From positions 62,001 to 126,000 of the IMG/VR virus record IMGVR_UViG_3300024239_000013: a stretch of 64,000 nucleotides of DNA; one strand, 5' to 3'. The notes beneath the pieces were generated by a model. It did no database searches. It was not told where the DNA came from and was given only the letters and a program-made list of their open reading frames with translations. The position numbers and the translations under genes were made by a program. Positions 25,303-50,069 of the stretch are shown one piece after another. Position 1 is the stretch's first letter. Each line of letters starts with the position of its first letter.

Positions 25303-26425
25303 TTATTTTATTTTAATAAATAAATTTCCTGATTCTATAGAGGAAATACACAATAAATATTCAACCAATGTGATTTTTTTATTGTTTATTTCCATGTAAA
25401 TTGAGTTTAGAAGAACTCTATCACTAAATGTTCCACCAAATTCGTCACACTTTAGAATTATCTTAGTGTTCTTACCAAAAATCTCTGTTCCGAGGTCAGT
25501 TAAAAGATCCCTTGAAATATTAAAACTTATAGTTTTATGTGCATATCTAGCAAATACCCTTAGAATAGATCCACGAAGTTTTGTTTTAAAGATTTCCAGA
25601 ATTGGGGATTCTCCTAGCTCTTCATAGCTCATATTATAATTTTCGAGATCCTCTTTTTTTATATTGAAATCTATGGTAGGCATATTATCTGAACCAGTTT
25701 ATCATACCATCCCACATTGCATCTCCGTGATTTATAGCCCCAAAATCGTAAAATTCCTCAATTCCAGATTCATCAAAATCCCTATCTTCTTCTGTGTAAT
25801 ATTCGGATTTTTCTAGAGTTTCTATTGGATTTTTTCTTTCCTTGTAATATTTCCACCATTCTTCTTTAGAGATATTCTCATAATCTGGATATATTGAAAT
25901 TTCACCGGGATTATATAGACTAGGTTTAACCTTAGCAGGAAGACCATAGTACCATATCTTTCTGTCAGTCTCATTTTCAGGGTTTATGAAATTGTAAGGA
26001 TGTTCTAATAGTTCTATAGTTAAAGCTTGAGCTTTCGACATTGCATAACCAAGATCTCTAGAAGCAAATGAATATATCAATTTACCATTTGCATAGATTT
26101 CACATTTACCATTAGCCCTTAAATCATATTCATCCCACTTATGTTTCAGATAATTATTTTGTTTATATCTGATTTCCCAACAAATTCTATTATTGCCTTT
26201 ATTTATATAAGGAGTAAGTTCTCTTTCGAAATTAATCTCACCTCTTACAGGTTCTTCTGTGTGATCTAGCCACCAAGTTGTTGGTGAATCATTCATTTCT
26301 CCTAATACATGGTGATATCCGTCTATGTCGTAAACCGTACATAGTCTATCGTCCAAATATACGTCAAAAGCTTTTCTTACTTTATATTTTTCCCTTGCTT
26401 TGCTTATAGTTAAATATTTCCCCAT
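25303..26425 (-). other. two hypothetical CDS (25303-25683, 25685-26425)
   Basis: ORF track. Confidence 0.55.
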
Positions 26426-26882: not shown

Positions 26883-27527
26883 TTAATTTTCCATGTGATG
26901 GTCTTTAGGTAGGACAAGAGTCTTTATTGGTCTGCCTTTTAAAATACCTAAGATCTCGTCTAGACTATATGGCTTTAAATCGTTACCATCAACTCCTACA
27001 TCCATTGCTCTCCCCGAATTTACCTTTAAATTAGGTGGAAGATGAACGTGTCCATGCAGATGTGGAACTCCCCTCCCCATATCTTCCCAGCTAGCAACAG
27101 GGAAGTGACTGCAGAAAAATTTGTATTTTTCAGTTTCTTTATCCCGAGGTCTTCTTATTTCTAAGATATCATAGAATGCAACTTCTTTGAATATCTCTTG
27201 AATACCTTCTCTATTATTTTTTATGTGATGATCGTGATTTCCAAGAAATATGATAATATTCTTACATTTTATTTGAGATCTAAATTGTTCTATGGATTCA
27301 AATCCACCAAAACTCCAATCCCCTAAGTGGACTAAATAATCATTCTCGTCAACATATAAATTTATTCCGTTAACAAGAGCGGAATTCATTTCCCCTAAGC
27401 TGTGGAAATCCCTAGTTCTGCTGGATTTATCACTCCAAGTTGAAACTCCTCGACAAATATTCTGGTGTGAATAGTGAGTATCGCTAGTAAACCAAATTTT
27501 CTGGTTCTTTTCTAATGTTATTTTCAT
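26883..27527 (-). CDS. calcineurin-like metallophosphoesterase
   Basis: SDTH, HLGD, GNHD, HLHGHVH. Confidence 0.88.
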   Translation of the reverse strand: MKITLEKNQKIWFTSDTHYSHQNICRGVSTWSDKSSRTRDFHSLGEMNSALVNGINLYVDENDYLVHLGDWSFGGFESIEQFRSQIKCKNIIIFLGNHDHHIKNNREGIQEIFKEVAFYDILEIRRPRDKETEKYKFFCSHFPVASWEDMGRGVPHLHGHVHLPPNLKVNSGRAMDVGVDGNDLKPYSLDEILGILKGRPIKTLVLPKDHHMEN

Positions 27528-27533
27528 AATTAT

Positions 27534-28631
27534 CTAATCTTCTGTTTTATTCCAAAATGGTTTTTGATATTTGGGTCTTATCATTTTCCAGATTTTTTCT
27601 GAATAGTCATTCCCATCATAGAACATAAATAAAATACTTGTTATATCTCTATCTTGTTCTTTTGCCCATTCTGCAAATTCCTTCCTTCCTTTATCTTTTT
27701 CAAAATCTGGTCTTTTTTCAAAGAAGCTCTTGTAAATATCGTTTACTCTTTCCTCTATTGATGAATAGTTATATTTCAATTCTTTTATTATTTTCTTCAC
27801 CCAAAGATCAAATTCATCAGGAACCCTATCCAAAAAATTACCAAGATCCTGTTTATTTTTTAAGAGCTCCCAGATATCCACATTCGAGAAGTTTGTCAAT
27901 AGTCTATGTAATCTAACATATTCCTCGCCTTTTATTTTCATTCTGAATCCGGAAGAAAATCTAATAACGAAACCCTCGGAATTTGAAGATATTATTTTTT
28001 TAAGCTCTTTGTAATTATTAAGACCGTCATATTTTTTAACTACTTTAAACCCTATAGTTCCTAGAATACCCTGGTTTTTTAAGTTCATTAAGCTTTTTTC
28101 GTCAGAGTGAATATCATATTCATATCCATCTAAATTATCAATAACTGAAAGTAAAATGATATCCTCAAAATCATAGCTAACAACTATTCGATTTTCTGGG
28201 TAGATAATCTCGAATAAATAAGTGCAATCTTTCAACAAATCCTTATAATGATATTTCTCCAATATAGATCTTCCCCTTATCGCTTGCTCTGAAGTGAATG
28301 ATCCTTTTGTAGCAAAATGCCATTCCCCTTCGTAATTGAAAAGTATACCCAAGGATCCGTCCATCTTCTCGAAAACATCAAAATTTTCGTTCGGAATATC
28401 GCTAGAATCCAATTCTTCTAAATTAAAGAATTTAGGAAATGTCCTTGCAACGACATTTCCTTCCCTATCAAGAACCGTCCCTCTCATATTAAGAGTGATT
28501 TCATCCCACTCTTTAGAGAATTGGCACTCTCTTGAATAGTTATAAATATCCAAAGGTAATGATGGATGAGAATTTTTTTCTAAAAGACCTCTTTCAATAT
28601 AGGAATTGAGAATATTTATATCGTATTTCAT
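27534..28631 (-). CDS. T4 Rnl1-like RNA ligase
   Basis: FPKFFN, EKMDGSLG, FEII, EGFV, KIKGEEY. Confidence 0.88.
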   Translation of the reverse strand: MKYDINILNSYIERGLLEKNSHPSLPLDIYNYSRECQFSKEWDEITLNMRGTVLDREGNVVARTFPKFFNLEELDSSDIPNENFDVFEKMDGSLGILFNYEGEWHFATKGSFTSEQAIRGRSILEKYHYKDLLKDCTYLFEIIYPENRIVVSYDFEDIILLSVIDNLDGYEYDIHSDEKSLMNLKNQGILGTIGFKVVKKYDGLNNYKELKKIISSNSEGFVIRFSSGFRMKIKGEEYVRLHRLLTNFSNVDIWELLKNKQDLGNFLDRVPDEFDLWVKKIIKELKYNYSSIEERVNDIYKSFFEKRPDFEKDKGRKEFAEWAKEQDRDITSILFMFYDGNDYSEKIWKMIRPKYQKPFWNKTED

Positions 28632-28930
28632 TTCATATTATTATAGTCGCAAATGTATGATATTATTTCGGGATTAAAAAAAATTAAAGATAAAGTTTTA
28701 CTTTTTTAATGATTATTTATATAAGAATGAATGCAGGTAACTTTCAATTTATATTTTATCCACATAACAATAACCATTTCAATTAAGGTCGTTTGTAATT
28801 TTAAATTTCAGAAAAGGAACGACACATACATCTATCAATTAAAAGTAATTCTAAAAAAAATTAATAGAATTTAAGATAGATATATTTTTTAAAAATACGC
28901 GTGAACAACTTCTATTTTCATATTCACGTT

Positions 28931-29238: not shown

Positions 29239-29676
29239 TTATTTGATTGTATTTTCGTTTATAAAAAAACCAAAATCAACTAAATCTTCAATATTTTTCA
29301 TGTTATCCCTAAATAAAAATTCAACACCTTCTTCATAGGAAATAAATCTTCCTATTGATATGTCATTATTGTGTACTAGATACCCATTTTTGTCTATTTT
29401 AAATCCTTTAAACAAAACTTTTTCTTTTGCTCTTAAATAATTATAAATTTCATCATTGTAGGCATCATCATAACCTTCAATATAATTTTCAGGTTTTTCT
29501 AAAACATTACCATCCTCGTCACAAGGAACAAACATTTCTAGTTTTAAAGATTGTTTTAGAAATTCCACATATCTTTTCACTGTATTAATATGTCTTATGG
29601 CTTCTTCCTGCGTTGGAATATTTTCTAATAATTCAAAATGATCTAAAACAAAATCAGAAATTGATATTAGTTTCAT
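29239..29676 (-). CDS. family D paralogue 1
   Basis: MKLIS...FLKQ.LKLEM..PCDED...KEKVLF shared with 30828-31208 and 37442-37882. Confidence 0.75.
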   Translation of the reverse strand: MKLISISDFVLDHFELLENIPTQEEAIRHINTVKRYVEFLKQSLKLEMFVPCDEDGNVLEKPENYIEGYDDAYNDEIYNYLRAKEKVLFKGFKIDKNGYLVHNNDISIGRFISYEEGVEFLFRDNMKNIEDLVDFGFFINENTIK

Positions 29677-29684
29677 AATTATCA

Positions 29685-29710
29685 CCACTTACTACAAGTG
29701 GGAAGTTTTA
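29685..29710 (-). repeat. gene-junction hairpin repeat AAAACTTCCCACTTGTAGTAAGTGG (copy 1 of 11)
   Basis: Other copies: 30528-30551, 31717-31740, 32110-32134, 32457-32484, 32876-32904, 37891-37914, 38528-38552, 38708-38736, 40150-40174, 41987-42009. Confidence 0.9.
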
Positions 29711-29713
29711 AGG

Positions 29714-29899
29714 TTAAAAAGGACAATATTCTTTTTTAGGTTTGTCCTGTAATTCTACATAATCTCTTTTTATTTTCTCTGAGATTGCTTTTCTTACAAA
29801 ATCTGAAACCTTTATATTTCTGGATTTCAATTTCTCTAAAGTTCTTTTTTGGGTAGCTGAAATTTTAAGCGTAAAAACTTCGGTATATAAAGGTCTCAT
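29714..29899 (-). CDS. small ribbon-helix-helix-like protein
   Basis: FTLKIS strand then helices (VSDFVRKAISEKI). Confidence 0.55.
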   Translation of the reverse strand: MRPLYTEVFTLKISATQKRTLEKLKSRNIKVSDFVRKAISEKIKRDYVELQDKPKKEYCPF

Positions 29900-29905
29900 A
29901 ATGAT

Positions 29906-29944
29906 TTTGTATTACTTTTTATTCGTCTATATAGATGTTATACG
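29906..29944. repeat. about 40-bp repeat TTTGTATTACTTTTATTCGTCTATATAGATGTTATA (also about 38760-38797, 40186-40222, degenerate 30564-30590)
   Basis: Direct comparison; always paired with a hairpin repeat. Confidence 0.85.
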
Positions 29945-30364
29945 CTATATTATTTTTCCCATCCTCTTTTCAAGTAATTGCGGATTTTCATAAATATTTC
30001 CTATTTTTTTATAAAGTCTATTTTCAAGTGGAAAAGTCCAGAACATACTTTCATCCAGTTCTTTTATATCCCCATCTTTATATTTCTCAAACTCATAATC
30101 TAACAAAGCTCCGAACATTCCCCATTCTTTAATCCAAACTACAACAGTAATATTTCCTTCTTTATCCTCAAGAATATCACTTTCCCATATAAATTTAAAT
30201 TCAGTGTCTTCAAATCCTGTCTTTTCCATTGCTATTATTTCAGCAAGATTTGCCCACTTATATTCTCCTGTTCCGTCTGGAATATAAAGAGCTTTTCCGT
30301 TTCCTACGATGGCATTGTATCTCATTTTTTTGCCATCCCATAATCTGTAATTAGGTCTTTTCAT
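29945..30364 (-). CDS. YopX family protein
   Basis: YRLWDGKKM, TGFED..IWESDIL, IGNIYENPQLL. Confidence 0.8.
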   Translation of the reverse strand: MKRPNYRLWDGKKMRYNAIVGNGKALYIPDGTGEYKWANLAEIIAMEKTGFEDTEFKFIWESDILEDKEGNITVVVWIKEWGMFGALLDYEFEKYKDGDIKELDESMFWTFPLENRLYKKIGNIYENPQLLEKRMGKII

Positions 30365-30365
30365 T

Positions 30366-30831
30366 TTATAATTTTTTAGTATTAATATTACACGCTTCAA
30401 CAGCATCTGTTAATCCTTGTGAATAACAACTATAACAAAGAGTTTTTAAATCAAATTCAGGCGTTTCTGGTTTAAAATCTTTAAACTTTGATTGAAATCT
30501 TTGTTCATCCAAATACATATTAATAAACACTTACTACAAGTGGGAAGTTTTAATATTAATTGTTTTTATTTCGTCTATTTTTGTGTTATAAGCAATTATT
30601 ACCAGACATTCGGTTAATTCTAATCTGTAGGTTTTCTCGCTCTTCATATAATTCCGACAAACGTTTATTGTAGTCAAAATCTTTGTTGGTTTCCATCGAA
30701 ACTTCAAATCTGTGAATACCATTTAAAACAATCGTTTCACCCTTTTTAATGCGAAAAATAACATTTATAGCACCATTTATTATTTCAACCTTGTTTTGCA
30801 TGTTGATTAATAATCTGTTTTTTTTTTTCAT
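30366..30831 (-). other. two small CDS (30366-30518, 50 aa, not in track; 30586-30831)
   Basis: Manual translation; the 30518 ATG follows a hairpin repeat. Confidence 0.5.
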
Positions 30832-31208
30832 AGTCCTATTTGTTTAATTGCTGATTCGGTTAAATAAATTGGTGTTATTGTATTAATAATATCTGATAAA
30901 GATTCTATTGTTGAGAATGTATTCACTAACCATTTAGCTTGAGCAATAGGTATATTTTCAAATAAAACTTTTTCTTTAGAATTATTGTATTGTATTTGTT
31001 TAAATTCTTTTTCACTTCCTGCATCTTTATCAGAAGCAAATGGATTATTTAAAATATTTCCATCTTCGTCACAAGGAAAAAACATTTCTAGTTTTAAAGG
31101 CTGTTTTAGAAAGTTAGCATATTTTACAATTGAATCTCTTTGTTTTATATCTGTAATATCTTGATTAAGAACAAAATCTGTCATTGATATTAATCTAAAT
31201 GTTTCCAC
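30828..31208 (-). CDS. family D paralogue 2, 5' end displaced by HNH insertion
   Basis: LISMTDFVL...FLKQPLKLEMFFPCDEDG. Confidence 0.75.
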   Translation of the reverse strand: METFRLISMTDFVLNQDITDIKQRDSIVKYANFLKQPLKLEMFFPCDEDGNILNNPFASDKDAGSEKEFKQIQYNNSKEKVLFENIPIAQAKWLVNTFSTIESLSDIINTITPIYLTESAIKQIGL

Positions 31209-31708
31209 GTTTTTCGGTTAATTATATTATATATATTACGATATGTTACTTTGTATTTTAGTGCAAGTTCAGTTGGTTTTAATGTTGAATTTCTAATTTC
31301 AATTATATCTTTTTCTGTTAATTTGCTTTGATGGTGTTTTTCACCTGTCATAGTATTTGAAATTGACTTTTTATGCTTATCTGTTATAGAAGTCCCTTTT
31401 CTAGCATTTATAAATTTTTCTGATACACCTTTATTAGATATACGTTTTTTAGACTCTAATCCTATTTTGTTTTTAGATTCTATTGTATGTTTATAGCCTT
31501 CTGGATGGTCATAATTATAATGACATTTTCTACAAAGCTTTATATAGTTTTCAACATTCTTTTCATGAAACTTGCCATTTATTAATGCATTATCCAATAT
31601 AGATTCTGTATCTCCACATCTTTCACAGGCTTTTATGTGTTTCATTCTTCTTCTAATCCAATCATGAATATTTCTATAATCTTTTGAGTTCGTTGATATT
31701 AGTTTCAT
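31190..31708 (-). mobile_element. HNH-type homing endonuclease-like gene with NUMOD3/HTH C-terminus
   Basis: HDWIRR..CERC..LCRKCHYNYD; HT.ESK.KI; SKLTEKDIIEIR..LALKYKVT..RKTWKH; 9-bp flanking duplication. Confidence 0.75.
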
Positions 31709-31710
31709 AA

Positions 31711-33355
31711 TTATATCCTCTTATAACAAGTGGGGTTTTTAACAAGTTCTATGTTTGATTGTTTGTAGTATCTAAGGGATTTTAATTTTTCTTGGATACG
31801 AGATTCTACATCAGAAAAATCAATTTCTTTAAATAGATCATGAATTATGTCAGTATCGTCCCCTGTTATCTCATTCCACAATTCCCAAGTTGAATCTGCT
31901 AATAAATCTCGAATTTGATTTTCGTCTATTCCATTAAAAATAATAGGAGTTTTTTCAGTTGCCATTGGAGATTTATCGAAATTAATAGCATCAATATCAT
32001 CAGAAATATTTTTTAGTCTTTGGTGACCTTCATCAGGATATACATAATATTTATATCCATTATTTATTGCTTCTTGTAATGTCATTTTTATATTTTTCAT
32101 TTTATGCTTCCACTTACTACAAGTGGGAAGTTTTTGATTCGTGTAATAATCTATCTATTTCAGCTACTATTAGTGCTCCTGCTTTTTGTAAATCTCTAAT
32201 TCGTAAATTAGTATTATCTGTATAATCTCTTTTTAACCATTCTAAATCAAATGGCCAGAAATGTAAAAACATATCATTTCCCCATTCATTATCAATAAAA
32301 CTAATCATATCATTAGTCATAGCATATGCACAGGCCGCATTTGCCAATTCTCCTTCTTTATGTTCTGCATCATGTTCATAAGTCCATCCTTCTATTTCAA
32401 TTTGTCTTTGCCTTTCTTCAGCAATTAATTGTATTTCTGTTTTCATTTTATTAAATCCACTTACAAATTCTAGTGGGAAGTTTTAGTTTTGTTTATCCAT
32501 CTAGCCAATCAGACCTATCATAACATAAATAAGAGTGGTCTTCTGGTTCTTCATATTTACAATTATTACAAAAAGCCTCAGAAAATTCTTCGTGAGTTGC
32601 TAATTCACCACAACCGCAGTAAAGTCTTTCTATTGAACCTTTTTTTATTTTTAACCTAATATTTCTATATTTAAAACAATCATCTATATTTTCAGGATAA
32701 CCATTTTTATCAATATCTCCTTCAACATAGTCTTTGTTATCGTACATTTCTTCAACGTTCATAAAATCTTGACCATAAGACCTAACATTTCCCCAAACTT
32801 CATCTCCAATTTCTATATGAACATAATCTCCTATTACTTCTTGTTCTGATATTGCTTTTACAAACATATTTTAATCCACTTCGCTATGCCTAGTTGGAAG
32901 TTTTAAATTTTTCTAACTCAACTAAGGAATCCATGTACAAATAGCAACTTTGTCCCAATTTTTATTTTCAAGTAAAGTCTTATCATCAGACCATTGACCT
33001 AAATGATTTCGTTCGCCACTCTCTTTATCCCACATCCAATCACAAAATTCATCCTCAAAACCAGTACCATTACCAGCATTAACAGTAACTCCATGAAATC
33101 TTGACAAGTCACCATCTACCAATAAAAATTGTAATGGGCTTTCAATGTCATTGTAAATAATTAAAGTTTTCATTTATTAATTCTTTTGTCTTTTTCTAAA
33201 ATTTCTTTTTTGTGTTCGAGGACTTTTCTAGCTTCTGTAGAAATTCCTTTATTTTTCTTTAAAGCATCAACAATTTTTCCCCATTCATATACATTTGAAT
33301 GACTTAATGATGCTGTTCTTACTTGCCCTTTAAACCAATAATTAATTGCTAACAT
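31711..33355 (-). other. five small CDS (31711-32100, 32117-32446, 32493-32867, 32922-33173, 33170-33355)
   Basis: The first three are each preceded by the hairpin repeat; 32117-32446 has the common phage IAEERQRQ...KAGALIVAEIDRL pattern. Confidence 0.65.
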
Positions 33356-33394
33356 AATTTTTCAATATTTAAAATTGTATAAAATTCTTTTGAT

Positions 33395-33797
33395 TTAGTG
33401 GCATTTCATTAACTTTCTATTGAATTCTTGAGTATGGTTTATTAATGGGTGGTTAAATTCAATTTCGTTAAACTTATTTTTATCAATATCAATTCGGATA
33501 CAACACTTCATCACATCAACATTACTGAATACACGTTCTTCTATTTCGTCATTTTTTTGGAATAAATTTAACGTCATTTAATTCATTGTACTCCTTTAAA
33601 GAAAAAGGTTTCACCTTATAATTTTGTCTTAATTTACCATAATCAAAAACCATTCTTATACCTCTATGGGCCAAATAATTATAATCTCTTGTCATATAAA
33701 CACAGGGATATAATATCCTCTGATCCATATAAATAAAACCAGTATCTAAAATTGATTTTAATCTTTTTAAGTTTAGTATATTATGATATAGTTCCAT
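33395..33797 (-). pseudogene. frameshifted gene, possible ADP-ribosyltransferase-like fold
   Basis: 33549-33797 and 33395-33577 join by removing one A from the A7 run at 33552-33558; LYH...TR...EIEER. Confidence 0.45.
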
Positions 33798-33848
33798 AAA
33801 TTAAATGTTAAAATACTACACACAGATCCAAAATTTTTACTAGAAATA

Positions 33849-34130
33849 CTAAACAATATTTGCCACACCATTGGTAATTATATAATGAGTTTTACACCCA
33901 AACCTATGAAGTATTGACGGACTTATGGTCGCTTTACCGTTATTAATGGTTAAGTTCCATTCACCTTCTTTAATAGGTATTGGTGTTTGCTTTCCACAAC
34001 CACAAGGACAAAGGTGATTTGCTATTTTATATTCTTTTGAATAATATAGTTTACCTGATTCCATTTCATTGAATCCTGGAATAAATTCTACTTCAATAAG
34101 TTCTAAAGGAACTTTCTGTAATGTTTTCAT
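33849..34130 (-). CDS. DUF6527-like metal-binding protein
   Basis: HLCPCGCG, TISPSI, CKTHYIITNG. Confidence 0.7.
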   Translation of the reverse strand: MKTLQKVPLELIEVEFIPGFNEMESGKLYYSKEYKIANHLCPCGCGKQTPIPIKEGEWNLTINNGKATISPSILHRFGCKTHYIITNGVANIV

Positions 34131-34153
34131 TTTAATATTTTTTTAAATAAAAA

Positions 34154-35363
34154 TTAACCCCATATAGAATCTTCCAATTTTTCAACATCTTCTAGACTTC
34201 TAATATCAACATATTTAATCCTAATCCCATTATGAAAAACTGACACATGAAAGGATTTATTGTCGGTAACCATTCTAAAAGAAATGTCATGACCATAGAG
34301 CCCATTTTTAGAATATTGTAAATCAAATAATGATGTTGCAACTTTTCTTAGTTCGTTATGATTTAGTTCGTTATGATTCATACTTTTCTTGTATATGTTA
34401 ATATCGATATTTTTTCTAAAAATAATTTGACTATCCAATAAGTTTTACCCGAGAGGCTATCTTGAATCCAGCAATTGTATGAACTTCATGTTCACTAGTT
34501 CCAAAGTAATTAGTCACAAGATAATTGCCGGGTTTTGGAGAAATCTTGACAACTGATCCGGATGGTTCTTTTACATCACTGACATTTCCAAACATGTATC
34601 TCCACATATCACATGAAATTGAACCGCAATAAATCCAACCCAATTTTGGAAGTTCTTCACTGGCCTCGAACTCCATTCCAGAATTATCTCCTTGACCTTC
34701 AGCCCAACGATAAGTCTCTTCTATGATTATGAATTCTTGTTTATCACTAGACAAATAGATATCAATTGACGTATTTCCCAGTTGTTGGTAGCCAATATTG
34801 TCATTGGCATGAAACTCAGCAATACGTCTTCTTCCAACTATAGTATTCAAAGAAAAGTAATTATAAGAAAAGTCTTTTTCAGCTTCGTCTAGTTTAGCAA
34901 TGTGATCTTTAAAGAAGTTAGCAAAGACGATTTCTCCATTTACTTTAAATTCAAATGACTGGGGTAAGTTATGTTCTAATTCGCAACGATCTTCCTGGTA
35001 TTCATAAAACCATTTACTTGCTGGAGATTCTTTGGTATTGAGTTCAGCAACAAAACAAATAATCTTAGACTCTAGTGGATCATACCTCCAACCGAGTGAT
35101 CGATTACAATTTGCACATGGTGAATCCAGTTCTATTTCCCTAATGTGTTTATCACCGTCCGGAATTGACTCAGTAATTAAAGACTCTGACCAAACAATCC
35201 CTTTTTTCGAAAGAGCTGAACTATTATCCCAAAATTCAATTCTTTTTCCAAGACGTTTTATCATTCCATCAGGGCCCCATCCATAAAAAGGATTGTGCCC
35301 ATTCTCGTCTATTTTAATCTCTCCGGAAACAAGTCCATCGTAGAGCTGTTTTATTGTTATCAT
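34154..35363 (-). other. two hypothetical CDS (34154-34438, 34431-35363)
   Basis: ORF track; 15-bp tandem duplication at 34349-34378 (NHNEL twice). Confidence 0.55.
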
Positions 35364-35429
35364 AAAGTAAATAATTTCATTTTTTTTAATCTAACTTCTT
35401 CTTTTGTCATTTTTCAGAGTCCTCTATAT

Positions 35430-35715
35430 TTAAAAAATATCAACTACACGTCTGCAAACTTTCTTTGTCCACCAGTTAATTCCACCTTTATTGTTTCTTA
35501 TAATCAATCTCTTTTCGTTGTTTCCCTTTACAGGTGAGTGTAAAATCTACCTTTCGCCTTGCAATAAACAATATCTCCTCCGTTGCAATATTTCCGTTTT
35601 ACAGGAGAAAGTTTATATCCTTGACCTGATTTAATTAAAGGTACCGTTGAATTTCCTTTTCGATTGTAACGAATGTTTCCTCGTTCTCTAATTTTTCTAA
35701 TTTATAATTTTTCAT
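35430..35715 (-). pseudogene. degraded copy of the S24/S26-like gene at 40230-40520
   Basis: Starts MKNYKLEKL, ends RVVDIF*; internal frameshifts. Confidence 0.8.
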
Positions 35716-35796
35716 TTGTATAAAATTTTTGATATTAAATATAGCAGCAAATATAAGAAATAAATATAACTGTTGCTTTCAATCTTATAGTGAATT

Positions 35797-36287
35797 TTAA
35801 ACCCCTACAGTCATACATTTTGTTGTTGGTACAAATTCATATTCTTTACCTGATGGGTATTTGACTTTTATCAAAGATGATAGCCCATTATCCAAAATTT
35901 CCACAATGACATCATCCCATTCCATCCAACCTATGCACCATAACCTTACCTTATCTCCGGTTTTGCAATCTTTAAGTTCTTTTTCCATAATAAAACGTAC
36001 TATAATATTTCACAAAAAACAAGAGTGCCGAAACTCTGTCTGTATGTTTTGGTTATTTTAGACCTTTTTTAGTGTATTTCTTGATGTTAGGAGTAATTTT
36101 TACCACACCTATTACACTTAGTGTTTTTTGGCATACGTCCATCACTTGGTACGTATCCAAATTCATCTATACAATCTTGAATCTTACAAGTGAATTGATG
36201 CCAACCAATTAAGCAAAGTAATCTTGAAACAAAACTACGCCTAGCAGAAGTGATATTCAATTTTGGATTTTTTTCTTCTTTTCCCAT
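35797..36287 (-). other. two small CDS (35797-35988, 36087-36287)
   Basis: ORF track. Confidence 0.5.
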
Positions 36288-36429
36288 TTTTGTTATCTAA
36301 TTTAAGTTATTCATATTTTGATAATTTGTGATTCTGAGCCCGCAAGTAAATATTTTCATCTTTAGACACACTGCATATAAACCCAGGTTCTGTTTCAAAA
36401 AATTCAAAGGCTTATAGTTTTATATCAAG

Positions 36430-37410
36430 TTAAATCTGAATAATTTCAAATCCTTTATATAAATCATTTTTCCAACGCCAGTCTAGATAATCTTTTTTTA
36501 GTAGTTTAACCTTTTTACCAAGAGAAAGAGCAAGATGTGCAACAACGGTATCAATAGTCCAAATCTCATCACATTTTAGAATCAATTCTGATGTATCTAA
36601 TAAATTATTTATTTCAACATAATCCGCAAAATCTAATTTTTGATCATGTTGAAGAGATACTATTTTTTTATCGTTGATTTTATCTCTGATTAAATTTGGA
36701 TCTATACTTCTTTCCTTGGTATTTTTAGATTTTGAATTTGCTGACCAGCAAAGACCAATATCCCATTTTCTACTTTCCTGTTGAACCTCTATCAGATAAC
36801 TTTGATCCGATAAATCAAAGAAGAAATCACCAGATAATAAAAATCTGTCGTGATTCATTACAAATTCGTATGAAATTGATCTTTCTGTAAAGAATGTAAC
36901 ATTTTGAAATTTAAAATATTTTTTAAAGAATTCTAAGGTTTCTTCATATACCTGATAAGATACGCTTTTATATTTTTTTGATAAAAATTCTATCTGCCGG
37001 GAGAACAGAATCTCGTCACCAAATCCTTGTTCGTTCAAGACAAGAATTGCATCTGCTTCCTCACCGAATTTCAATCTTTTTATAGGTAGATCTGGATATG
37101 ATTTTCTGATACCCTCACATCTAAATTTCCAATATCCCTTAGCTTCTTCTGCTTTTTTGAGATGCATTAAACATAAAAATATTTCATACTGTGATTCACC
37201 ACCATTTAATTCAGATTTTCTATAACATCTTAAAGCAGATTTCCAATCAAATATTGCAGATTTACAAAGACCCATATTGTAGTAAATTATTGATAGTGTT
37301 TTACTATCTAATTTTTTACCGAGTATTTTTTTTAGTATATCATAGGAACCTTTATAATCACCATTATTATAAAGTAAAATAGATTTCCCAACTATAGCCG
37401 AAATGTCCAT
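36430..37410 (-). CDS. TPR plus glycosyltransferase family 9-like protein
   Basis: N-terminal TPR (YYNMGLC), EQGFGDEILFSR, TIDTVVAHLA, DWRW. Confidence 0.78.
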   Translation of the reverse strand: MDISAIVGKSILLYNNGDYKGSYDILKKILGKKLDSKTLSIIYYNMGLCKSAIFDWKSALRCYRKSELNGGESQYEIFLCLMHLKKAEEAKGYWKFRCEGIRKSYPDLPIKRLKFGEEADAILVLNEQGFGDEILFSRQIEFLSKKYKSVSYQVYEETLEFFKKYFKFQNVTFFTERSISYEFVMNHDRFLLSGDFFFDLSDQSYLIEVQQESRKWDIGLCWSANSKSKNTKERSIDPNLIRDKINDKKIVSLQHDQKLDFADYVEINNLLDTSELILKCDEIWTIDTVVAHLALSLGKKVKLLKKDYLDWRWKNDLYKGFEIIQI

Positions 37411-37441
37411 ATTTTATTTTTTTAATCTATTAATTTCTAGC

Positions 37442-37882
37442 TTAATTTTTCTGTTTTCGTATTCCTATTTGTTTTACTGCGTTTTCGGTTAATATAGGTT
37501 CATAGTGTATTAAGCATTCTATTGTAGTTTGATATAAATCCTTTACTTTTAATATAGGGACTGAACACATGTAAATAGTTCCTTTAAAAATTTCAAATCC
37601 TTCAAACAAAACTTTTTCTTTTGCTTTTTTATATCTGTAAATTTCATCATTGTACTCTGTCATAATATTAGGAAGTCTCTGTTCATAGTCTTTAGGTTCG
37701 TATAAAATTTCATCATCTTCATCACAAGGCGCAACCATTTCTAATTTTAAAGGCTGTTTTAGAAAATTATCATAATTAGTTCTTATTTCTTCATACCAAG
37801 CAAGATATACATTTCTTGTAGGAAATTCTTTTTCTTTTGATTTACATAACTCACCAAAAGAAGTATTTGATATTAGTTTCAT
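37442..37882 (-). CDS. family D paralogue 3
   Basis: MKLIS...FLKQPLKLEMVAPCDED...AKEKVLFEGF. Confidence 0.75.
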   Translation of the reverse strand: MKLISNTSFGELCKSKEKEFPTRNVYLAWYEEIRTNYDNFLKQPLKLEMVAPCDEDDEILYEPKDYEQRLPNIMTEYNDEIYRYKKAKEKVLFEGFEIFKGTIYMCSVPILKVKDLYQTTIECLIHYEPILTENAVKQIGIRKQKN

Positions 37883-38088
37883 AATTATTACCACTTACTA
37901 CAAGTGGGAAGTTTATTTTTTTGTTATATATTTCAACACTTATAATTCTTTCTGAGGTACGATTAATTTTCCAAATCGCTTGTTCTATTGCTCTTTCAAA
38001 TGATAATGCTGAAATATTTATCCTTCGTTTTTTTTTCCAGAAATATCATTTATAATGGTAATTCTATAAGTTTCCATAATTATGATTT

Positions 38089-40139
38089 TTAAATATTAAT
38101 AGAATCTAATTTTTTTTCTAATTCTGCAAATAATTCCTTGTCTTTTCCTTCTTTAATTATTCCCAAAATACAACTAGTTTGATAACGCAATGAACCAACG
38201 ATGTCTTTTATTCTTTGTTCTTCTAATTCTTCATCTATATGAAAATTCAAATCAACTTCATTATCTTGAACAAAATCAATTGTAAACTGTTCATAATTTC
38301 CACTATGGATTTTATCCTCATAATACCTGAAAATTTCTAAAGCTTGTTTTAACATGTTTTTAATTTTTATTTTTTTATTATCTTTATCTTGTCTATTGTA
38401 GGAACTATAATGTTCAATTCATGGCATTTATTACGAATTATCATCCAAGCAGCTACTTTACTAATTGCTTTAGCTTTAAATCCATGAATTTCATCAATAA
38501 ATTCTTTATTATTTTTCATAATTTTTACCACTTTCTACAAGTGGGAAGTTTTATTTAAAGCCAAATTTCTTTTTACCTTTAATTTTACGCTCCGTTTTTC
38601 TACGATAGTTACGTTTTTCTCTGCTAGAAACTAAGTCAGACTTACCTAAAAACTCGTAATCTCTAGTTATTTTATAACTATTTGTTTCTTTTTCCATTTT
38701 AGTAATTCCACTTCTCTATGCCTAGTGGGAAGCTTTAAGGTTAAATGCTCCATAGCGATTTTGTATTACTTTTATTTCGTCTATATGGATGTTATACACA
38801 ATACTACATTAGGGTTTCAATTATAGTTCTGTGTAAAATAAAATTATGAAGGTATAAATCCATATCTAAAACCTTCTCTACCGTATAACGCATCGGTACA
38901 AATAATTCCATCTGAGTTGTTAATTTCGTCTATATCTTCTTTTGTAAGTTCAGTTCTAATTAACATACTTACCATTCTATTGTTCTCATAAGAAAGTCTT
39001 TTGTTTCCATTCACATCATCAATAATTTCTAATGGTTCTATACCATTTTCACCAACAATACATTTTCTTGATAAAGACCAATTAACAACGCTTGGATGTT
39101 TTGTTGTAATTATTTTGTTTTGATGAACACCTGCTTTAACATATTTTTCTACTAATTCCTTCATATTTTTATTTTTTTCACCGCACAATTAGTTTTTAGT
39201 TAAATCTGTTCTTATCCAACAACCTATAAATTTAGCCTGCTCAATTAATTGTCTTTCAAATTCTTTAGCGTCTTCTTTTTTGATGAAAACCTTTGCTTGT
39301 CTTCTTGTGTCGTCTGACCACCCTGTTTTTACATACCAAGTTACCGTCCAGCTTTCAAGTTCTGTAACTGTTTGCATTTTCTCTTTTGGAATAAATAATT
39401 TAAATAATTTCATTTTTTTAAATTTGTTTAAGCCAACCCACAAAAAATAAAAATATCCTATGACACGGGTTTGGCGTAATGTCACCAGATAATTTAGTGC
39501 TAAAATTTAAGCTCATGGAAAGGTGCACTAACACCAAGCAGAAAAATGTTAGATGAAATTCTTTTCAATAAAATCATCTAATCCCATTTTACGAAGTTTG
39601 CTATTTAATATCTCCCCTTTTTTATTACATTCTGTACCTCTTTTTGATTTTTCAAGATAGAATGTGTAAAACTCTAAACCTATTGGGTTTTCATATTTTT
39701 TTGATAATTCTGCTTTATAAATTTCCATTTTATTTTTTTTTAAGTTAAACATTTGTTTTTCCAAAGTCACTACATCACAAATGCTTTAGCGAGACCATAG
39801 TTATTAAGTTAAATTTTAGTTATAGTCCTTTTACGAAAGTGATAACTCCTCTTCGCAAATAGTTTGAATCATTGCAATCCTAAATCCGGAACGAAGTCCA
39901 AACTTAGAATCATTACAATCTACATCTTTAATTTTTGTATAAACTTTTTTCCAAAACTCTATGTCTTGCTTCATTTCATCGATAATTAAATCAACCAAAT
40001 TGCAAAACATATCCCAAGATTGGTTATCAAACGAATCAACGTTTTCTAAAACAAATTTTTGAAACTCATTTTTTGCTTCTTCGGAATTATGTCTTTGATT
40101 TCCGAGTTGTATCATTTTTACTTTATTATCCCAGTGCAT
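38089..40139 (-). other. small hypothetical CDS (38089-38355, 38367-38519, 38551-38697, 38844-39188, 39189-39485, 39549-39770, 39831-40139)
   Basis: ORF track plus two manually translated 48-50 aa ORFs that follow hairpin repeats. Confidence 0.55.
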
Positions 40140-40229
40140 AATTTTATTTCACTTGCTTTATAGCGGGAAGTTTTAAGGTTAAAGGTTTGTATTACTTTTA
40201 TTTCGTCTATATAGATGTTATATGCAAGG

Positions 40230-40520
40230 CTAAATAACCTCTACCACACGACCATAAACTTGCTTTGTCCATCCATTGATACCACCTTTATTATTTCCGA
40301 TGAGCAATCCCTTTTCGTTGTTTTTGCCCTTAACCAAGTGAGTGTAAAAATTACCTTTCACTTTACAATAAACAATATCACCTTCATTACATTCTTCCCA
40401 CTTTACAGGAGCAAGTTTATGTTCCTGTCCTGATTTAATTAGTGGTATCATTGAGTTTCCTTTTTCACTTGTTACAAACGTTTCTCCATTCTGTAACTTT
40501 TCTAATTTGTAATTTTTCAT
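40230..40520 (-). CDS. peptidase S24/S26-like small protein
   Basis: GNSMIPLIKSG, GDIV, THLV. Confidence 0.55.
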   Translation of the reverse strand: MKNYKLEKLQNGETFVTSEKGNSMIPLIKSGQEHKLAPVKWEECNEGDIVYCKVKGNFYTHLVKGKNNEKGLLIGNNKGGINGWTKQVYGRVVEVI

Positions 40521-40521
40521 T

Positions 40522-40812
40522 CTATTTAACTTTAAATTTTACTAGTTCTCCAAAATCCATTAATTTACCTCTAAAATCACAAATTTTAGATTTTCCTGAA
40601 ACCTTATAATAAGGGCAATCCTTATTACATTCAGATTTATCACCAACAGTTTCTAATTCTGAACACCATATATAATCTTTTTCTTTTGAAGGAATTGCTT
40701 CAAAAAGTTCTATTTCATTCAATCCTTCTTCTTTTGCTCTTTCTAAATAAGTTTGTAAAGGATAACAAATGTTAGCATCTTCATTTTCAAAATATAATTT
40801 TTCTGTTTTCAT
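40522..40812 (-). CDS. Cys-rich hypothetical protein
   Basis: ORF track. Confidence 0.55.
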   Translation of the reverse strand: MKTEKLYFENEDANICYPLQTYLERAKEEGLNEIELFEAIPSKEKDYIWCSELETVGDKSECNKDCPYYKVSGKSKICDFRGKLMDFGELVKFKVK

Positions 40813-41362
40813 AACTTAATTTTCTTTCAATTTAATCCAACCATATTCAATTAGGTTATCTACAGATAAACCCACGTAAGGTAATGCATAACCTTTAGAA
40901 CGGAGGTAATCAAAAACTTGCATCCAATTTTTAATTCCATTAGTACTAGAAGTAGTTCCGCTGTCATTAATTGAAGTTCTAAAAATTGATAGTATTAATT
41001 CTTTAATTGCACCAGATAAATGACCTAGTCCAAATATTTTAGAAACCTCAATAGCATCTTCATCACTTATCTGTGAAAGTGGGTTTAGTATTAATTGGCA
41101 TTCATTTATATTTGCATTACATGATAATTCATTTTTTTCAAAATTTTCATCTTCTAATGATACTATCCAAACCTGCTTTGTAAAATTTCCACATGATAAA
41201 TAGAATGAAACTATATTTCCTATTCTATCTTGGTAAAATACTTGTTGATTTAAATACTGAGCAAAAAACTTTGCTTTATTTTCTAATGTGTTTTCTGTTT
41301 TCATAACTTAATTTTCTTTCAATTTAATCCAACCATATTCAATTAGGTTATCTACAGATAAA
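40799..41362. repeat. perfect 72-bp direct repeat (40799-40870 and 41291-41362)
   Basis: Covers the 3' end of each family E gene and the next MKTE start. Confidence 0.9.
40816..41304 (-). CDS. family E paralogue 1
   Basis: MKT.NTLENKAKFFAQY...PLSQIS.ED...RSKGYALP...LIEYGWIKLKEN. Confidence 0.75.
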   Translation of the reverse strand: MKTENTLENKAKFFAQYLNQQVFYQDRIGNIVSFYLSCGNFTKQVWIVSLEDENFEKNELSCNANINECQLILNPLSQISDEDAIEVSKIFGLGHLSGAIKELILSIFRTSINDSGTTSSTNGIKNWMQVFDYLRSKGYALPYVGLSVDNLIEYGWIKLKEN

Positions 41363-41769
41363 TCCATCCAAGGTAATGCATAACCTTTGGAACGAAAGTA
41401 ATCACATTCCTTTGACCCAATTTTTCTATCACCATTCCAATGATGGAGACTTCTGAAGGTCTTAAAATTACGACCTAATTCAATCGAGGCAATTTCACTA
41501 AAAGTAAAATAATGATTAACTTCCAATATCTCCCCTAGTTCATCATAAGTTTTATTATATGTAAACATAATGCCCTGGATCGTGTCTTCATTACTAATCT
41601 GTGAAAGTGGTTTTAGCTCTAAGTAACTCCTATCTATACCATACATATTCGATGTATCTACAGGATAAATTTCTTTATTCCCTGAATTTGATATATCCGA
41701 TAAAACTTTTTGTCCCCAATACTGAGCAAAAAACTTTGCTTTATTTTCTAATGTGTTTTGTGTTTTCAT
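41308..41769 (-). CDS. family E paralogue 2
   Basis: Same constant blocks, unrelated interiors. Confidence 0.75.
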   Translation of the reverse strand: MKTQNTLENKAKFFAQYWGQKVLSDISNSGNKEIYPVDTSNMYGIDRSYLELKPLSQISNEDTIQGIMFTYNKTYDELGEILEVNHYFTFSEIASIELGRNFKTFRSLHHWNGDRKIGSKECDYFRSKGYALPWMDLSVDNLIEYGWIKLKEN

Positions 41770-41774: not shown

Positions 41775-43327
41775 TTAATCTTTTTCTAAGTAAATTATCC
41801 CTTCACCTTCCAATAAGATATTGTCTGCAATATCTGAAAAAATGTCTGGTGCCTCTATTAATGCATCGTCACTTTGCTGTATACATTCTCCTATTCCATG
41901 TTTTTCTAAAAACTCTGTTATTTTTTCTATTGCTAATTCTTTTTTTTCGGTTGTCCAATTTACTTGATATGCCATAATCTTTAATTCACTTAATATAAGT
42001 GAGAATTTTTTATTAAATAAGATTAAATTAAATATTATTTCTGGGATAAAGTTGTTATTTTAATGAGGTATAAAAACCTATCTGAATGTAAATATAGATG
42101 ATTAATCGTGAATCTAAAATAAAACTCCATTACCTTTCGATTTCTTTCTCCTTTACTATAACAGGGAAACATATAGTGTCACTTTCTTTAAAACTCATAT
42201 ATTCATGGAGGTTAACTTCTCTCAATTCACTATTATCGAGCAAAAAGTAATACCTTTCTACTATAATTCCTCTTCCTATAGATCCCGTTACATACTTTTT
42301 GGATTTGATTTCATAACATTGATCTTCATAAGTGTAAACATAACTTTCTTTTTCACAAGAAAAAAGAAATGATAAAATAATTAAAAAATTTACTAATCTC
42401 ATATAATTTAAAAATTTTACTATTTATTTTTAAATTCTTTTTTAATGAATCTTTCACCGTCTCTCTTAATGGAATCTAGTATGGAATCATTTGATGAATA
42501 ATAGGAATAGAAAGAATCTTTAATGTATTCGTATTTTTTATCTGGTGGAAGATTCTCAAAATAGCTGTTCATTTTACCGATAATAAATTCAACTAATCCA
42601 TCTAAAGAGCAAATGAAAGAAATAAAATTATTATTTGTCTCAATTTCTTCCTGAGTAATATTCTCCTTATTTATTCTAGATTTTAGAATTCTCATCTGAT
42701 ATTGAACATTAGTGGATAATATTGCTATTTTATAATAATCATTTTTTGTAAAATTATTATTGTTTTTTTCACAATATTCTAGGAAAAAATATTGAAATAT
42801 CGAAATCTCCCGGTCAGAATAAGGAAGCCACTTAACGATGTTTAAGTATTTATTTATTCTATCCTTTGATGAAATTTTCTCAGTAACATCTTGCTGAATA
42901 TTATCTAATCCCATTTGATCTTTTTTTTAATCCAACAAAATTAATAAACATCTACGATAAATAAAAAAAATTACGGAAATCCCATAATTTTTTTTAATAT
43001 CAGTAAATGCCTGTCAATTTAACTATCTCTTTTAAGACACAGGAGAAATAAGATGAAATTGCTTTTAATTTGGTTATATTATCTATTAAATCTTTATTTA
43101 TATAAATTAACCAAATAGTTTATGATCAAAAAAATTGAGATTGCGTGGATAAATGCTGATGTGTAAAATATAATTTTAGTGTAGTTAAATTTTTTAAAAA
43201 ATTCACCATCATCCAAAATTAAATATTTAAAAACATATAGAATTCCTATTACTGGAATATGAATGTTAAATAATTTTCTCATATTGTATAATGTTTTAAT
43301 GCTTTTAATAAACATTGTTCCAAACAC
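41775..43327 (-). other. small CDS (41775-41975; 42130-42402 lipoprotein LFSC; 42420-42914; 43094-43327 membrane)
   Basis: ORF track. Confidence 0.55.
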
Positions 43328-44995: not shown

Positions 44996-45412
44996 CTATT
45001 GTATTAATTTTAAAGATTCCTTTAAAGCAGACTCCAATGCAGATTCATAGGTACAACCCCCTTCTTTTATGAAGAAATATAAATAGTGGTCTGAATATTC
45101 ATCAGTTTTATAGATCTCTACTTTATATTCATTATATCCAGGTTTATTTCGTAATATTTGGATATCTATTTTATGTTCTTCTCTAAGCCACTTCTGTAAA
45201 AGAGATTGTGTTGTTACGTAATACCTTTCACCTTCGTCGAATTCATTATTGCAATCATATATTACACCATCCAAATCTTCGACTATTAAAAACTCATCAT
45301 GCTCCGTGCATAATCCTTTATAGTTGTCACAATAAAAATCTGCAAATCTTAAATTGAATCCTTTTTTCTTAGCCAATTTTGCGGTTTCCTCCGATATCTT
45401 TGTTTCTAGCAT
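44996..45412 (-). CDS. family C paralogue
   Basis: ETAKLAKKKGF...TQSLLQKWLRE...TYESALE..LKESLKLI. Confidence 0.8.
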   Translation of the reverse strand: MLETKISEETAKLAKKKGFNLRFADFYCDNYKGLCTEHDEFLIVEDLDGVIYDCNNEFDEGERYYVTTQSLLQKWLREEHKIDIQILRNKPGYNEYKVEIYKTDEYSDHYLYFFIKEGGCTYESALESALKESLKLIQ

Positions 45413-45479
45413 TTTTTTGTTTTTAAAAAATATAATAATTCTAATATCTTTATAGATTCAATAAATTCCTTATGAAATA

Positions 45480-45725
45480 TTATTCATAATCTTCCGAATC
45501 CTTATTTATATCAAGACTGTCACAAACAGAAAAGATTCCTTTATACTTTTCGTCGTAATCTTCTTCCCAATTCTTCGATATTTCGTTCCAAATATATCCT
45601 TATGAACCTTTAGAGTTTTCCGAATATCTAAATTCAACAATCTCGTCATCAACATCAACCTTTCACTGGATACTTTCGACTCGCCATACAACTTGAACGT
45701 CCTCAAGTAACTTAATTTTTTCCAT
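45480..45725 (-). pseudogene. acidic 81-codon gene with two premature stops
   Basis: MEKIKLLEDVQVVWRVESIQ*KVDVDD...KGS*GYIWNE...EDYE*. Confidence 0.55.
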
Positions 45726-46572: not shown

Positions 46573-46577
46573 GACCT

Positions 46578-46970: not shown

Positions 46971-46971
46971 T

Positions 46972-47382: not shown

Positions 47383-47400
47383 AGTTTTTTGTTTGGTAAG

Positions 47401-47886: not shown

Positions 47887-47923
47887 TTATTACTTTTTAA
47901 TTATATAAACACCATGAATTTCT

Positions 47924-48495: not shown

Positions 48496-48499
48496 TATT

Positions 48500-49285: not shown

Positions 49286-49290
49286 AATAA

Positions 49291-50065: not shown

Positions 50066-50069
50066 TATT

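What the first reader, a model, noticed from the sequence alone, without database searches (positions are those of the whole stretch)
29701..40226. Filled and empty versions of the same site: an RHH-like gene present once and absent twice
At 29.7-29.9 kb the order is hairpin-TAAGGTTAAA, the 61-aa RHH-like gene, then TTTGTATTAC...GATGTTATA. At 38708-38797 and 40150-40222 the same two flanks are nearly joined with no gene. A degenerate version is at 30528-30590. So a composite module was copied several times and gains or loses cargo. The RHH-like protein is a candidate binder of these repeats (inference).
Basis: partly seen in the sequence, partly recalled or inferred. Interest (0 to 1): 0.65.

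Follow-up and report, generated by a model that had tools for sequence, protein, structure and literature searches.

The report
Shuffled gene cassettes in jumbo phage
A small DNA-binding-protein gene, with its upstream control sequence and a conserved hairpin that sits just before the next gene, is swapped as a unit between unrelated Flavobacterium-family phages, and this 319-kb phage also keeps three copies of the flanks with the gene deleted.

Summary
On the coding (minus) strand the order at 29.7-29.9 kb is P, a 61-aa RHH-like gene, then U. P is a 37-nt block. U is a hairpin element ending 8-10 nt before the next ATG. At 38.7 and 40.2 kb P and U are 14 and 2 nt apart, and a degenerate pair lies at 30.5 kb.

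The two flanks are different things. P is the RHH gene's own 5' region: in every other contig examined it precedes that gene. U is separate. It reads TAAAACTTC, then a 6-bp stem with compensatory changes, then a short spacer and ATG. There are 9 strong and 3 weak copies in this genome, and it occurs in at least 14 other phage contigs and 8 Flavobacteriaceae genomes before unrelated small ORFs.

The 271-nt P-RHH-U unit is 95% identical in an otherwise unrelated 35.5-kb phage, so it moves horizontally. The "empty" sites keep the last codon, the stop and the trailing bases of the RHH gene (TTTAACCTT), so they are deletion scars, not virgin targets.

The nearest analogues are T4-type PeSL cassettes and mycobacteriophage start-associated sequences. 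The functions of P, U and the protein are inferred, not shown. I rate it a new variant of a known kind.

The parts
29906..29942 (-). P1: 37-nt 5' control block directly upstream of the RHH gene. It ends 7 nt before the gene's ATG and starts 2 nt after the stop of the upstream YopX-like gene.
29714..29899 (-). 61-aa ribbon-helix-helix-like gene (phrog_25647), the only copy in the genome.
29671..29715 (-). U1: stop-hairpin-start element before the 145-aa gene 29239-29676. The RHH stop codon lies in its 5' extension.
38760..38796 (-). P2: copy of P without the gene.
38743..38759 (-). Scar between P2 and U9. It holds an ATG region resembling the start of the RHH gene, joined to TTTAACC, the end of the gene.
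38692..38742 (-). U9: variant U with a 9-nt loop like that of U6, before the 48-aa gene 38551-38697.
40186..40222 (-). P3: copy of P without the gene, 7 nt after the stop of gene 40230-40520.
40134..40185 (-). CC, then the TTTAACCTT scar, then U10 (weakened stem), before the 102-aa gene 39831-40139.
30560..30590 (-). P4: degenerate P. Its TATAAC overlaps the stop of gene 30586-30831.
30513..30557 (-). U2, before the 50-aa ORF 30366-30518.
32095..32140 (-). U4, before the 129-aa gene. The upstream 109-aa gene ends ...KTSHL* at the loop TAG.
32441..32490 (-). U5 (8-nt loop), before the 109-aa gene that is shared with provirus G004.
32862..32910 (-). U6 (9-nt loop), before the 124-aa gene.
37877..37921 (-). 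U7, before the 146-aa paralogue of the gene behind U1.
38514..38558 (-). U8, before the 50-aa ORF 38367-38519.
31703..31745 (-). Weak, degenerate U before the 172-aa gene 31190-31708.
   Evidence: E 0.13
41970..42016 (-). Weak U variant. Its stem TCACTT/AAGTGA has the outer pair changed on both sides. It precedes the 66-aa gene.

Best explanation
The region 29.6-42 kb is an accessory-gene block of a 319-kb Flavobacteriaceae jumbo phage in which small ORFs are linked by portable regulatory sequences.

U is an intercistronic 'stop-hairpin-start' element. It has an invariant TAAAACTTC whose TAA often ends the upstream ORF. Next comes a 6-bp stem with a GTAGW or longer loop; the loop's TAG closes a second frame. 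An A/T-rich spacer of 8-10 nt and the next ATG follow. I infer that U acts in the mRNA on initiation, re-initiation or processing of the downstream cistron, and that it uses a host factor or none.

P is the RHH gene's own 5' promoter/operator region.

P-RHH-U is a cassette that passes between unrelated phages, most simply by homologous recombination in the conserved U and P sequences during co-infection or with prophages. In this genome the cassette was copied to further U-bearing junctions and the redundant RHH ORF was deleted. That left P fused to U in front of three other ORFs. The single remaining RHH protein then probably controls all P copies in trans.

Shown: the anatomy, the copy distribution, the stem covariation, the horizontal sharing and the scars.
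Inferred: the recombination mechanism, action at the RNA level, P as promoter/operator, and RHH binding.
For: Cassette exchange:
- Of the whole 35.5-kb G001, only 271 nt match the 319-kb genome at high identity (95%). The match runs exactly from the outer end of P to the ATG behind U.
- G002 shares the module at 90%, plus the adjacent 96-aa gene at 91%. That homology starts at the ATG, and the gene lies 10 kb away in the window.
- The RHH ORF is under purifying selection: synonymous to non-synonymous codon changes are 7:1, 11:3 and 21:6.

Scars:
- TTTAACCTT between P and U is present only in the P-linked U copies of this genome. It equals the end of the RHH gene.
- The two scars have different junctions.

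P belongs to RHH:
- Searches show P in front of the RHH gene in other contigs.
- Distant homologues, including the one in Flavobacterium phage 6H, keep a GTAWTACAA motif just before the start codon.

U:
- 58 distinct matches, 95.2% of cells paired against 24-45% when the partner is slid.
- 3 of 6 pairs show changes on both sides: CCACTT/AAGTGG against CCGATT/AATCGG in 5 copies, plus TCACTT/AAGTGA and others. No shuffle of 500 reaches the covariation score.
- The spacer to the ATG is 8-10 nt although its sequence differs between copies.
- 15 upstream ORFs stop at the TAA of U and 11 at the loop TAG.
- No protein family is common to the U-bearing phages, and the RHH gene is absent from G004 and G005.

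Mosaicism: U9 carries the loop of U6 behind the RHH-type 5' extension.

A second case of loss at U: in G004 an extra 64-aa ORF lies between the 109-aa gene and the next U. In the window that gene is fused straight to U.
Against: - P as a promoter and U as an RNA element are therefore unproven.
- P has no Bacteroidetes -33/-7 (TAnnTTTG) promoter, although that type occurs elsewhere in the window.
- The high sequence conservation of U's flank and loop suggests a specific binding partner that I could not name.
- The covariation was counted on an alignment fitted to the model.
- RHH-less P-U junctions were not found in other viral contigs, so loss of the gene is documented only within this one genome and, partially, in G003.
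- No close relative of the whole phage was available for comparison.
- The RHH fold assignment rests on sub-threshold Pfam hits and weak structural matches.
Confidence: 0.6

Rival explanations
1. Insertion rather than loss: P-U is the ancestral intergenic unit and the RHH ORF was inserted into one copy.
For: The P-to-U joins are very tight (2 and 14 nt). Cassettes clearly move between phages.
Against: - Outside this genome P was never found without the RHH gene.
- The empties carry the gene's last codon, stop and trailing bases, and one carries an ATG remnant.
- The two empties have different junctions.
Confidence: 0.13
2. U is a double-stranded DNA operator, comparable to the stoperators of mycobacteriophage L5, bound by the RHH protein or another repressor. 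It would not be an RNA element.
For: It is an inverted repeat in short intergenic gaps, in one orientation, overlapping stop codons. The RHH gene is always followed by a U.
Against: - Changes on both sides keep complementarity while altering base identity.
- Loop length varies from 5 to 9 nt.
- U occurs in phages with no RHH homologue and no shared protein.
- The distance to the ATG is fixed.
Confidence: 0.1
3. U is a promoter, for example a hairpin promoter of the kind used by phage N4 virion RNA polymerase, or a site for a phage-specific polymerase or sigma factor. It would give very short leaders.
For: A conserved asymmetric sequence plus a hairpin lies at a fixed distance from gene starts. 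P lacks a host-type promoter.
Against: - U-bearing phages share no polymerase or any other protein.
- It occurs in small temperate phages and proviruses.
- Many upstream ORFs are translated into U, as expected for an intercistronic site.
Confidence: 0.1
4. An active mobile element moves the cargo: an integron-like cassette with U as an attC-type site, or a transposon or MITE with P and U as its ends.
For: The hairpin has conserved flanks, small promoterless ORFs are exchanged, and gene-boundary breakpoints are sharp.
Against: - No integrase or transposase is common to carriers.
- P and U are not inverted copies of each other.
- No target duplication is seen.
- U lies at a fixed distance before start codons rather than at cassette 3' ends only.
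Confidence: 0.05
5. Chance similarity, upstream regions duplicated along with paralogous genes, or metagenome mis-assembly at short repeats.
For: The record is a metagenome contig. Two U-led genes are paralogues (29239-29676 and 37442-37882).
Against: - Zero matches are expected by chance.
- The genes behind the four P-U copies are unrelated.
- The same elements occur in independent assemblies.
Confidence: 0.02

Closest known systems
PeSL (promoter-early stem-loop) cassettes of T4-type phages (Arbiol et al. 2010, PMC2839356; Comeau et al. 2014, PMC4122927)
   Same: Short conserved composite regulatory repeats are concentrated in a block of small ORFans. The ORFs between them are present or absent between genomes. 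[quoted passage not shown]
   Different: - A PeSL is a terminator stem-loop followed by a sigma-70-type early promoter and a Shine-Dalgarno sequence. Here the hairpin lies 8-10 nt before the ATG, with no U-tract, no host-type promoter and no SD.
- P and U are separable, and P belongs to one gene.
- U is shared by unrelated phage types, not by one lineage.
- Mini-circles were not tested.
Start-associated sequences (SAS/ESAS) of Cluster K mycobacteriophages (Pope et al. 2011, PMC3203893)
   Same: A conserved asymmetric motif in one orientation lies a few nt before start codons of a subset of non-structural genes from different families. The upstream stop codon sometimes lies inside it. It is absent from the host genome. 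Its function is unknown but is thought to concern translation initiation.
   Different: - SAS contains the SD core, and the ESAS inverted repeats show no base-pair covariation. U has no SD and does covary.
- SAS is confined to one phage cluster.
Morons and other autonomous accessory-gene cassettes of temperate phages
   Same: A small gene with its own control region is found in varying contexts.
   Different: Morons carry their own promoter and terminator and have no conserved linker. Here conserved flanks recur.
Small ribbon-helix-helix regulators (Arc/Mnt of P22, CopG, omega, SegB, RHH antitoxins)
   Same: Similar size and a predicted strand-helix-helix order. Members hit RHH-clan Pfam families. 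The gene sits directly behind a conserved repeat-bearing upstream block, as autoregulators do.
   Different: No curated family reaches its threshold. There is no toxin partner, since the downstream gene varies. DNA binding was not tested.
Integron gene cassettes with attC sites
   Same: Promoterless small ORFs are bounded by structured repeats whose structure, more than their sequence, is kept.
   Different: There is no integrase. The element is 25 nt rather than 57-141 nt, and its position relative to start codons is fixed.

Membership tests
PeSL-type mobile regulatory cassette | Contains a host-type early promoter | tested here: not met
   Neither P nor U has a TTTG / TAnnTTTG promoter, although such sites exist at 28657, 35755 and 42943. 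The sigma-70 scan gave no more hits than shuffles.
PeSL-type mobile regulatory cassette | The stem-loop acts as a terminator upstream of the promoter | tested here: not met
   The hairpin lies downstream of P, 8-10 nt before the ATG, and is followed by an A-rich spacer. It looks terminator-like only on the antisense strand.
PeSL-type mobile regulatory cassette | Repeats cluster in a hyperplastic block of ORFans | tested here: met
   All strong copies lie in 12 kb of a 319-kb genome. Most linked ORFs have no Pfam or annotated PHROG hit.
PeSL-type mobile regulatory cassette | ORFs between repeats are present or absent between genomes, with breakpoints in the repeats | tested here: met
PeSL-type mobile regulatory cassette | Circular excision products | not testable with these tools
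   Needs inverse PCR or raw reads.
Ribbon-helix-helix (Met_repress clan) DNA-binding proteins | Sequence match to an RHH family | tested here: inconclusive
   For the window protein: DUF6290 E 0.004 and CcdA E 0.11, both below cut-off. Among 15 homologues: DUF6290 in 13 (best 2.4e-5), CcdA in 9, RHH_1 in 4, RHH_3 in 3 (best 9.9e-6). PDB profile search: NikR at E 1.2.
Ribbon-helix-helix (Met_repress clan) DNA-binding proteins | Strand-helix-helix fold | tested here: inconclusive
   The AF2 model has an extended N-terminal segment and helices 15-26 and 32-46, with mean pLDDT 68. The best structural matches are RHH proteins but are weak: SegB Z 3.8, omega Z 3.3, TacA Foldseek E 7.7.
Ribbon-helix-helix (Met_repress clan) DNA-binding proteins | Obligate dimer with a two-stranded sheet that binds DNA | not tested
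   No usable computational result (see Tried and rejected). Needs biochemistry.
Start-associated sequences (Cluster K type) | Conserved motif in one orientation a few nt before start codons of unrelated genes | tested here: met
Start-associated sequences (Cluster K type) | Contains the Shine-Dalgarno core | tested here: not met
   There is no GGAGG-like core in U. The only 16S complementarity is one 8-mer, about what chance gives.
Integron cassette / attC | Linked integron integrase | tested here: not met
   No protein family is shared by the U-bearing genomes.
Known RNA families (Rfam 15) | Match to a curated covariance model | tested here: not met
   No match at E up to 1 in 28.5-42.5 kb.

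The most novel reading that the evidence does not exclude
U is a previously undescribed class of structured 'stop-hairpin-start' junction used by many unrelated Flavobacteriaceae phages. Its hosts largely lack Shine-Dalgarno-led initiation. U would let ribosomes or an RNase of the host start or re-start on each downstream cistron independently of context. Because it is conserved, it would also serve as the universal linker through which single ORFs are exchanged between jumbo, small lytic and temperate phages.
Probability: 0.3. Interest if true: 0.75.

Novelty: new variant of a known kind. Interest (0 to 1): 0.6.

Why it matters
It gives a concrete, sequence-defined route by which single small genes pass between phages as different as a 319-kb jumbo phage, 35-kb phages and proviruses of one host family. 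It extends the PeSL idea beyond T4-type phages.

The hairpin element is conserved, covarying and tied to start codons in a bacterial group that largely lacks Shine-Dalgarno initiation. That makes the control of internal cistrons in Bacteroidota phage operons directly testable with a 25-nt element.

P copies without their regulator gene suggest how a mobile repressor cassette can seed a small regulon.

Tried and rejected
- Homodimer prediction of the 61-aa protein: verdict 'no answer'. It is not used as evidence either way.
- Foldseek against the PDB: nothing significant.
- Exact P pattern in viral contigs: no match. The looser P core matched only G001 and G002 plus chance hits.
- P-to-U junctions with a gap of 0-30 nt in viral contigs: four unrelated hits only.
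- Relatives of the whole phage through the 310-aa gene: none. Megablast of 14 kb against cultured phages gave one 268-nt hit.
- U against 50,697 cultured-phage records: no true match.
- The literature holds none of the three spellings of the hairpin searched.
- Rfam: no match.
- The sigma-70 promoter scan gave no more hits than shuffles. The terminator scan flags U only on the antisense strand.
- Pairing of U with 16S rRNA of a Flavobacterium: one 8-mer at positions 651-658, about chance level, and nothing convincing at the 3' tail. I dropped this idea.
- An alternative pairing, ACTT with AAGT enclosing an inner mini-hairpin, was considered from the window copies. I dropped it because the compensatory changes fit the CCACTT/AAGTGG stem.
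- A toxin-antitoxin reading of the RHH gene: rejected, because the downstream gene differs between contexts.


Full report
SETTING

The window is bases 62001-126000 of a 319,334-bp virus record. It has about 30% G+C and CheckV rates it complete. All credible genes between 27 and 43 kb are on the minus strand, so I read the elements on that strand.

Promoters of the Bacteroidota type (TAnnTTTG) occur in the window. The hairpin element also lies in genomes of Flavobacterium, Myroides and Paenimyroides. RHH homologues lie in Flavobacterium psychrophilum phages 6H, 2A and 23T and in the FPSV series. The host is therefore most likely a member of the Flavobacteriaceae (inference).

THE OBSERVATION

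The 37-nt block that I call P occurs three times: at 29906-29942, 38760-38796 and 40186-40222. These copies have 2, 1 and 0 mismatches to the pattern, which is the 40.2-kb copy. None is expected by chance, and P occurs nowhere else in the genome. A degenerate copy lies at 30560-30590.

Each P is followed, in the direction of transcription, by the element that I call U.
- At 29.8 kb a 61-aa ORF (29714-29899) lies between P and U.
- At 38.7 kb 14 nt lie between them.
- At 40.2 kb 2 nt lie between them.
- At 30.5 kb there is nothing between them.

U IS A SEPARATE, WIDESPREAD ELEMENT

Repeat finding and a covariance model give 9 strong and 3 weak copies of U in the genome. All are on the coding strand, and all but one weak copy lie in window 29.6-42 kb.

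U has four parts:
- an invariant TAAAACTTC;
- a 6-bp stem, usually CCACTT/AAGTGG;
- a loop of GTAGT or GTAGA, or a longer loop of 6-9 nt;
- an A/T-rich spacer of 8-10 nt, then ATG.

A 15-nt word from U found the same element, with the same spacing to an ATG, in at least 14 IMG/VR contigs. These range from 26% to 39% G+C and from 15 to 115 kb, and they include two proviruses. Each has 1-3 copies. The downstream ORFs are small and unrelated to each other.

On 58 distinct copies, 95.2% of stem cells pair, against 24-45% when the partner is slid. Three of the six pairs show changes on both sides. One whole alternative stem, CCGATT/AATCGG, occurs in five copies. No shuffle of 500 reaches the covariation score. 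That alignment was fitted to the model, which favours pairing, but the alternative stems are plain in the raw sequences.

Upstream ORFs very often end inside U: 15 stop at the TAA of TAAAACTTC and 11 at the loop TAG. As a result, unrelated proteins end in KTSHL.

U has no Rfam match. It has no match in 50,697 cultured-phage records. The hairpin sequence appears in no paper of the library.

The complete U-bearing records G000, G001, G002, G004 and G005 share no protein family. G004 and G005 have no RHH homologue.

P BELONGS TO THE RHH GENE

In viral and metagenome contigs, every true P (with the TAAC...ATAGACG signature) is followed by the same 61-aa gene.

More distant homologues, at 40-60% identity, keep only a GTAWTACAA motif just before the start codon. 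This includes the one in phage 6H.

The protein has at least 332 clusters of close relatives. It belongs to phrog_25647, of unknown function. It is under purifying selection.

It is probably a ribbon-helix-helix protein:
- Members of the family repeatedly hit RHH-clan Pfam models, all below or near threshold.
- The model shows an extended N-terminal segment and two helices.
- The best, though weak, structural matches are the RHH proteins SegB, omega and TacA.

Its downstream neighbour varies, so it is not half of a toxin-antitoxin pair.

THE CASSETTE MOVES

G001 is a complete 35.5-kb phage. Only one 271-nt stretch of it matches the 319-kb genome at high identity (95%). That stretch runs from the outer end of P to the ATG behind U.

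G002 (34 kb) shares the module at 90%, and next to it a 96-aa gene at 91%. In the window that gene lies 10 kb away, at 40522-40812. The homology begins exactly at its ATG.

In G003 most of the RHH ORF is replaced by another ORF. That ORF is fused, out of frame, to the last ~40 nt of the RHH gene, and it ends at the loop TAG of U.

The U-led 109-aa gene at 32117-32446 is shared with provirus G004. There a further 64-aa ORF lies before the next U, whereas in the window the gene is joined straight to U.

Cargo therefore does vary, and the breakpoints lie at U, at P or at start codons.

WHAT THE 'EMPTY' SITES ARE

Between P and U, both empties carry TTTAACCTT. In the filled copy these bases are the last codon, the stop and the trailing bases of the RHH gene. 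U copies in this genome that are not linked to P lack them.

The 38.7-kb copy also keeps an ATG-containing stretch like the gene's start.

The two junctions differ. U9 carries the loop of U6 behind the RHH-type extension, which makes it a mosaic.

RHH-less P-U joins were not found in other contigs.

The simplest reading is that the cassette was copied within this genome and the redundant ORF was then deleted. The empties are not unoccupied targets.

MECHANISM (INFERRED)

Exchange is most simply explained by homologous recombination in the short conserved sequences, as proposed for the PeSL cassettes of T4-type phages (PMC2839356, PMC4122927). No shared recombinase exists.

I infer that U works in the mRNA, for these reasons:
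- the stem covaries;
- the loop length varies;
- the distance to the ATG is fixed although the spacer sequence varies;
- upstream ORFs are translated into it.

Its role could be re-initiation after termination, insulation of the initiation region, or processing and stabilisation of the downstream cistron. I cannot tell which.

P has no host-type promoter. It may be an unusual promoter giving a near-leaderless RHH mRNA, an operator, or both. The single RHH protein would then act on all four P copies.

COMPARISON AND NOVELTY

The system works like PeSLs and resembles the start-associated sequences of Cluster K mycobacteriophages (PMC3203893). It fails defining features of both: it has no host-type promoter, no terminator and no Shine-Dalgarno core.

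I rate it a new variant of a known kind. The hairpin element itself appears to be undescribed.

LIMITS

There are no transcript or read data. No close relative of the whole phage was available. The record is a metagenome assembly.

Noticed in passing
window 45000-59000: Several paralogous gene families are each present in 6-9 tandemly scattered copies (repeat families D1-D15). This is a large multi-gene expansion next to the studied block.
   Followed up: no
window 28636-28694, 53132-53190, 54296-54354, 58824-58882: A conserved intergenic repeat containing a Bacteroidota-type -7 box (TAnnTTTG). These are probably host-type promoters, and they are of a different kind from P.
   Followed up: partly
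window 29239-29676, 30828-31208, 37442-37882 (minus strand): Three paralogues of a ~125-146-aa family (phrog_12560 / phrog_31163, unknown function). Two of them lie directly behind U copies.
   Followed up: partly
window 32117-32446; L024, L019, L064, L013 and others: Eleven unrelated ORFs in different phages end in ...KTSHL because they read into U and stop at its loop TAG. Fifteen others use the TAA of TAAAACTTC as their stop.
   Followed up: yes
window 40522-40812 and 40134-40222; G002 25320-25906: The gene order in G002 is P-RHH-U-g96. In the window it is g96, an S24-like gene, P, the scar and U. This is a circular permutation and would fit a circular intermediate, but that is speculative.
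   Followed up: partly
window 40230-40520: This 96-aa ORF has a weak Peptidase_S24-like hit. It is 81% identical at the DNA level to a 634,780-bp uncultured phage record (LR745206.1), the only megablast hit of the 14-kb region among cultured or deposited phages.
   Followed up: no
window 31190-31708 (minus strand): This 172-aa ORF has Cys-rich CxxC...CxxCH motifs and a helix-turn-helix-like tail (weak Mor hit). It may be a homing-endonuclease-like or regulatory gene, and it is preceded by a degenerate U.
   Followed up: no
window 40816-41304 and 41308-41769: Two tandem paralogues with nearly identical N- and C-termini lie just upstream of the 96-aa gene.
   Followed up: no
window 26883-28631: A T4-type RNA ligase (PF09511) and a metallophosphoesterase gene lie next to the accessory block. 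This may be an RNA-repair pair.
   Followed up: no
G000:C1:54495-54542 (outside the window): One further weak U-like match (E about 1e-3) on the minus strand, about 37 kb upstream of the cluster.
   Followed up: no
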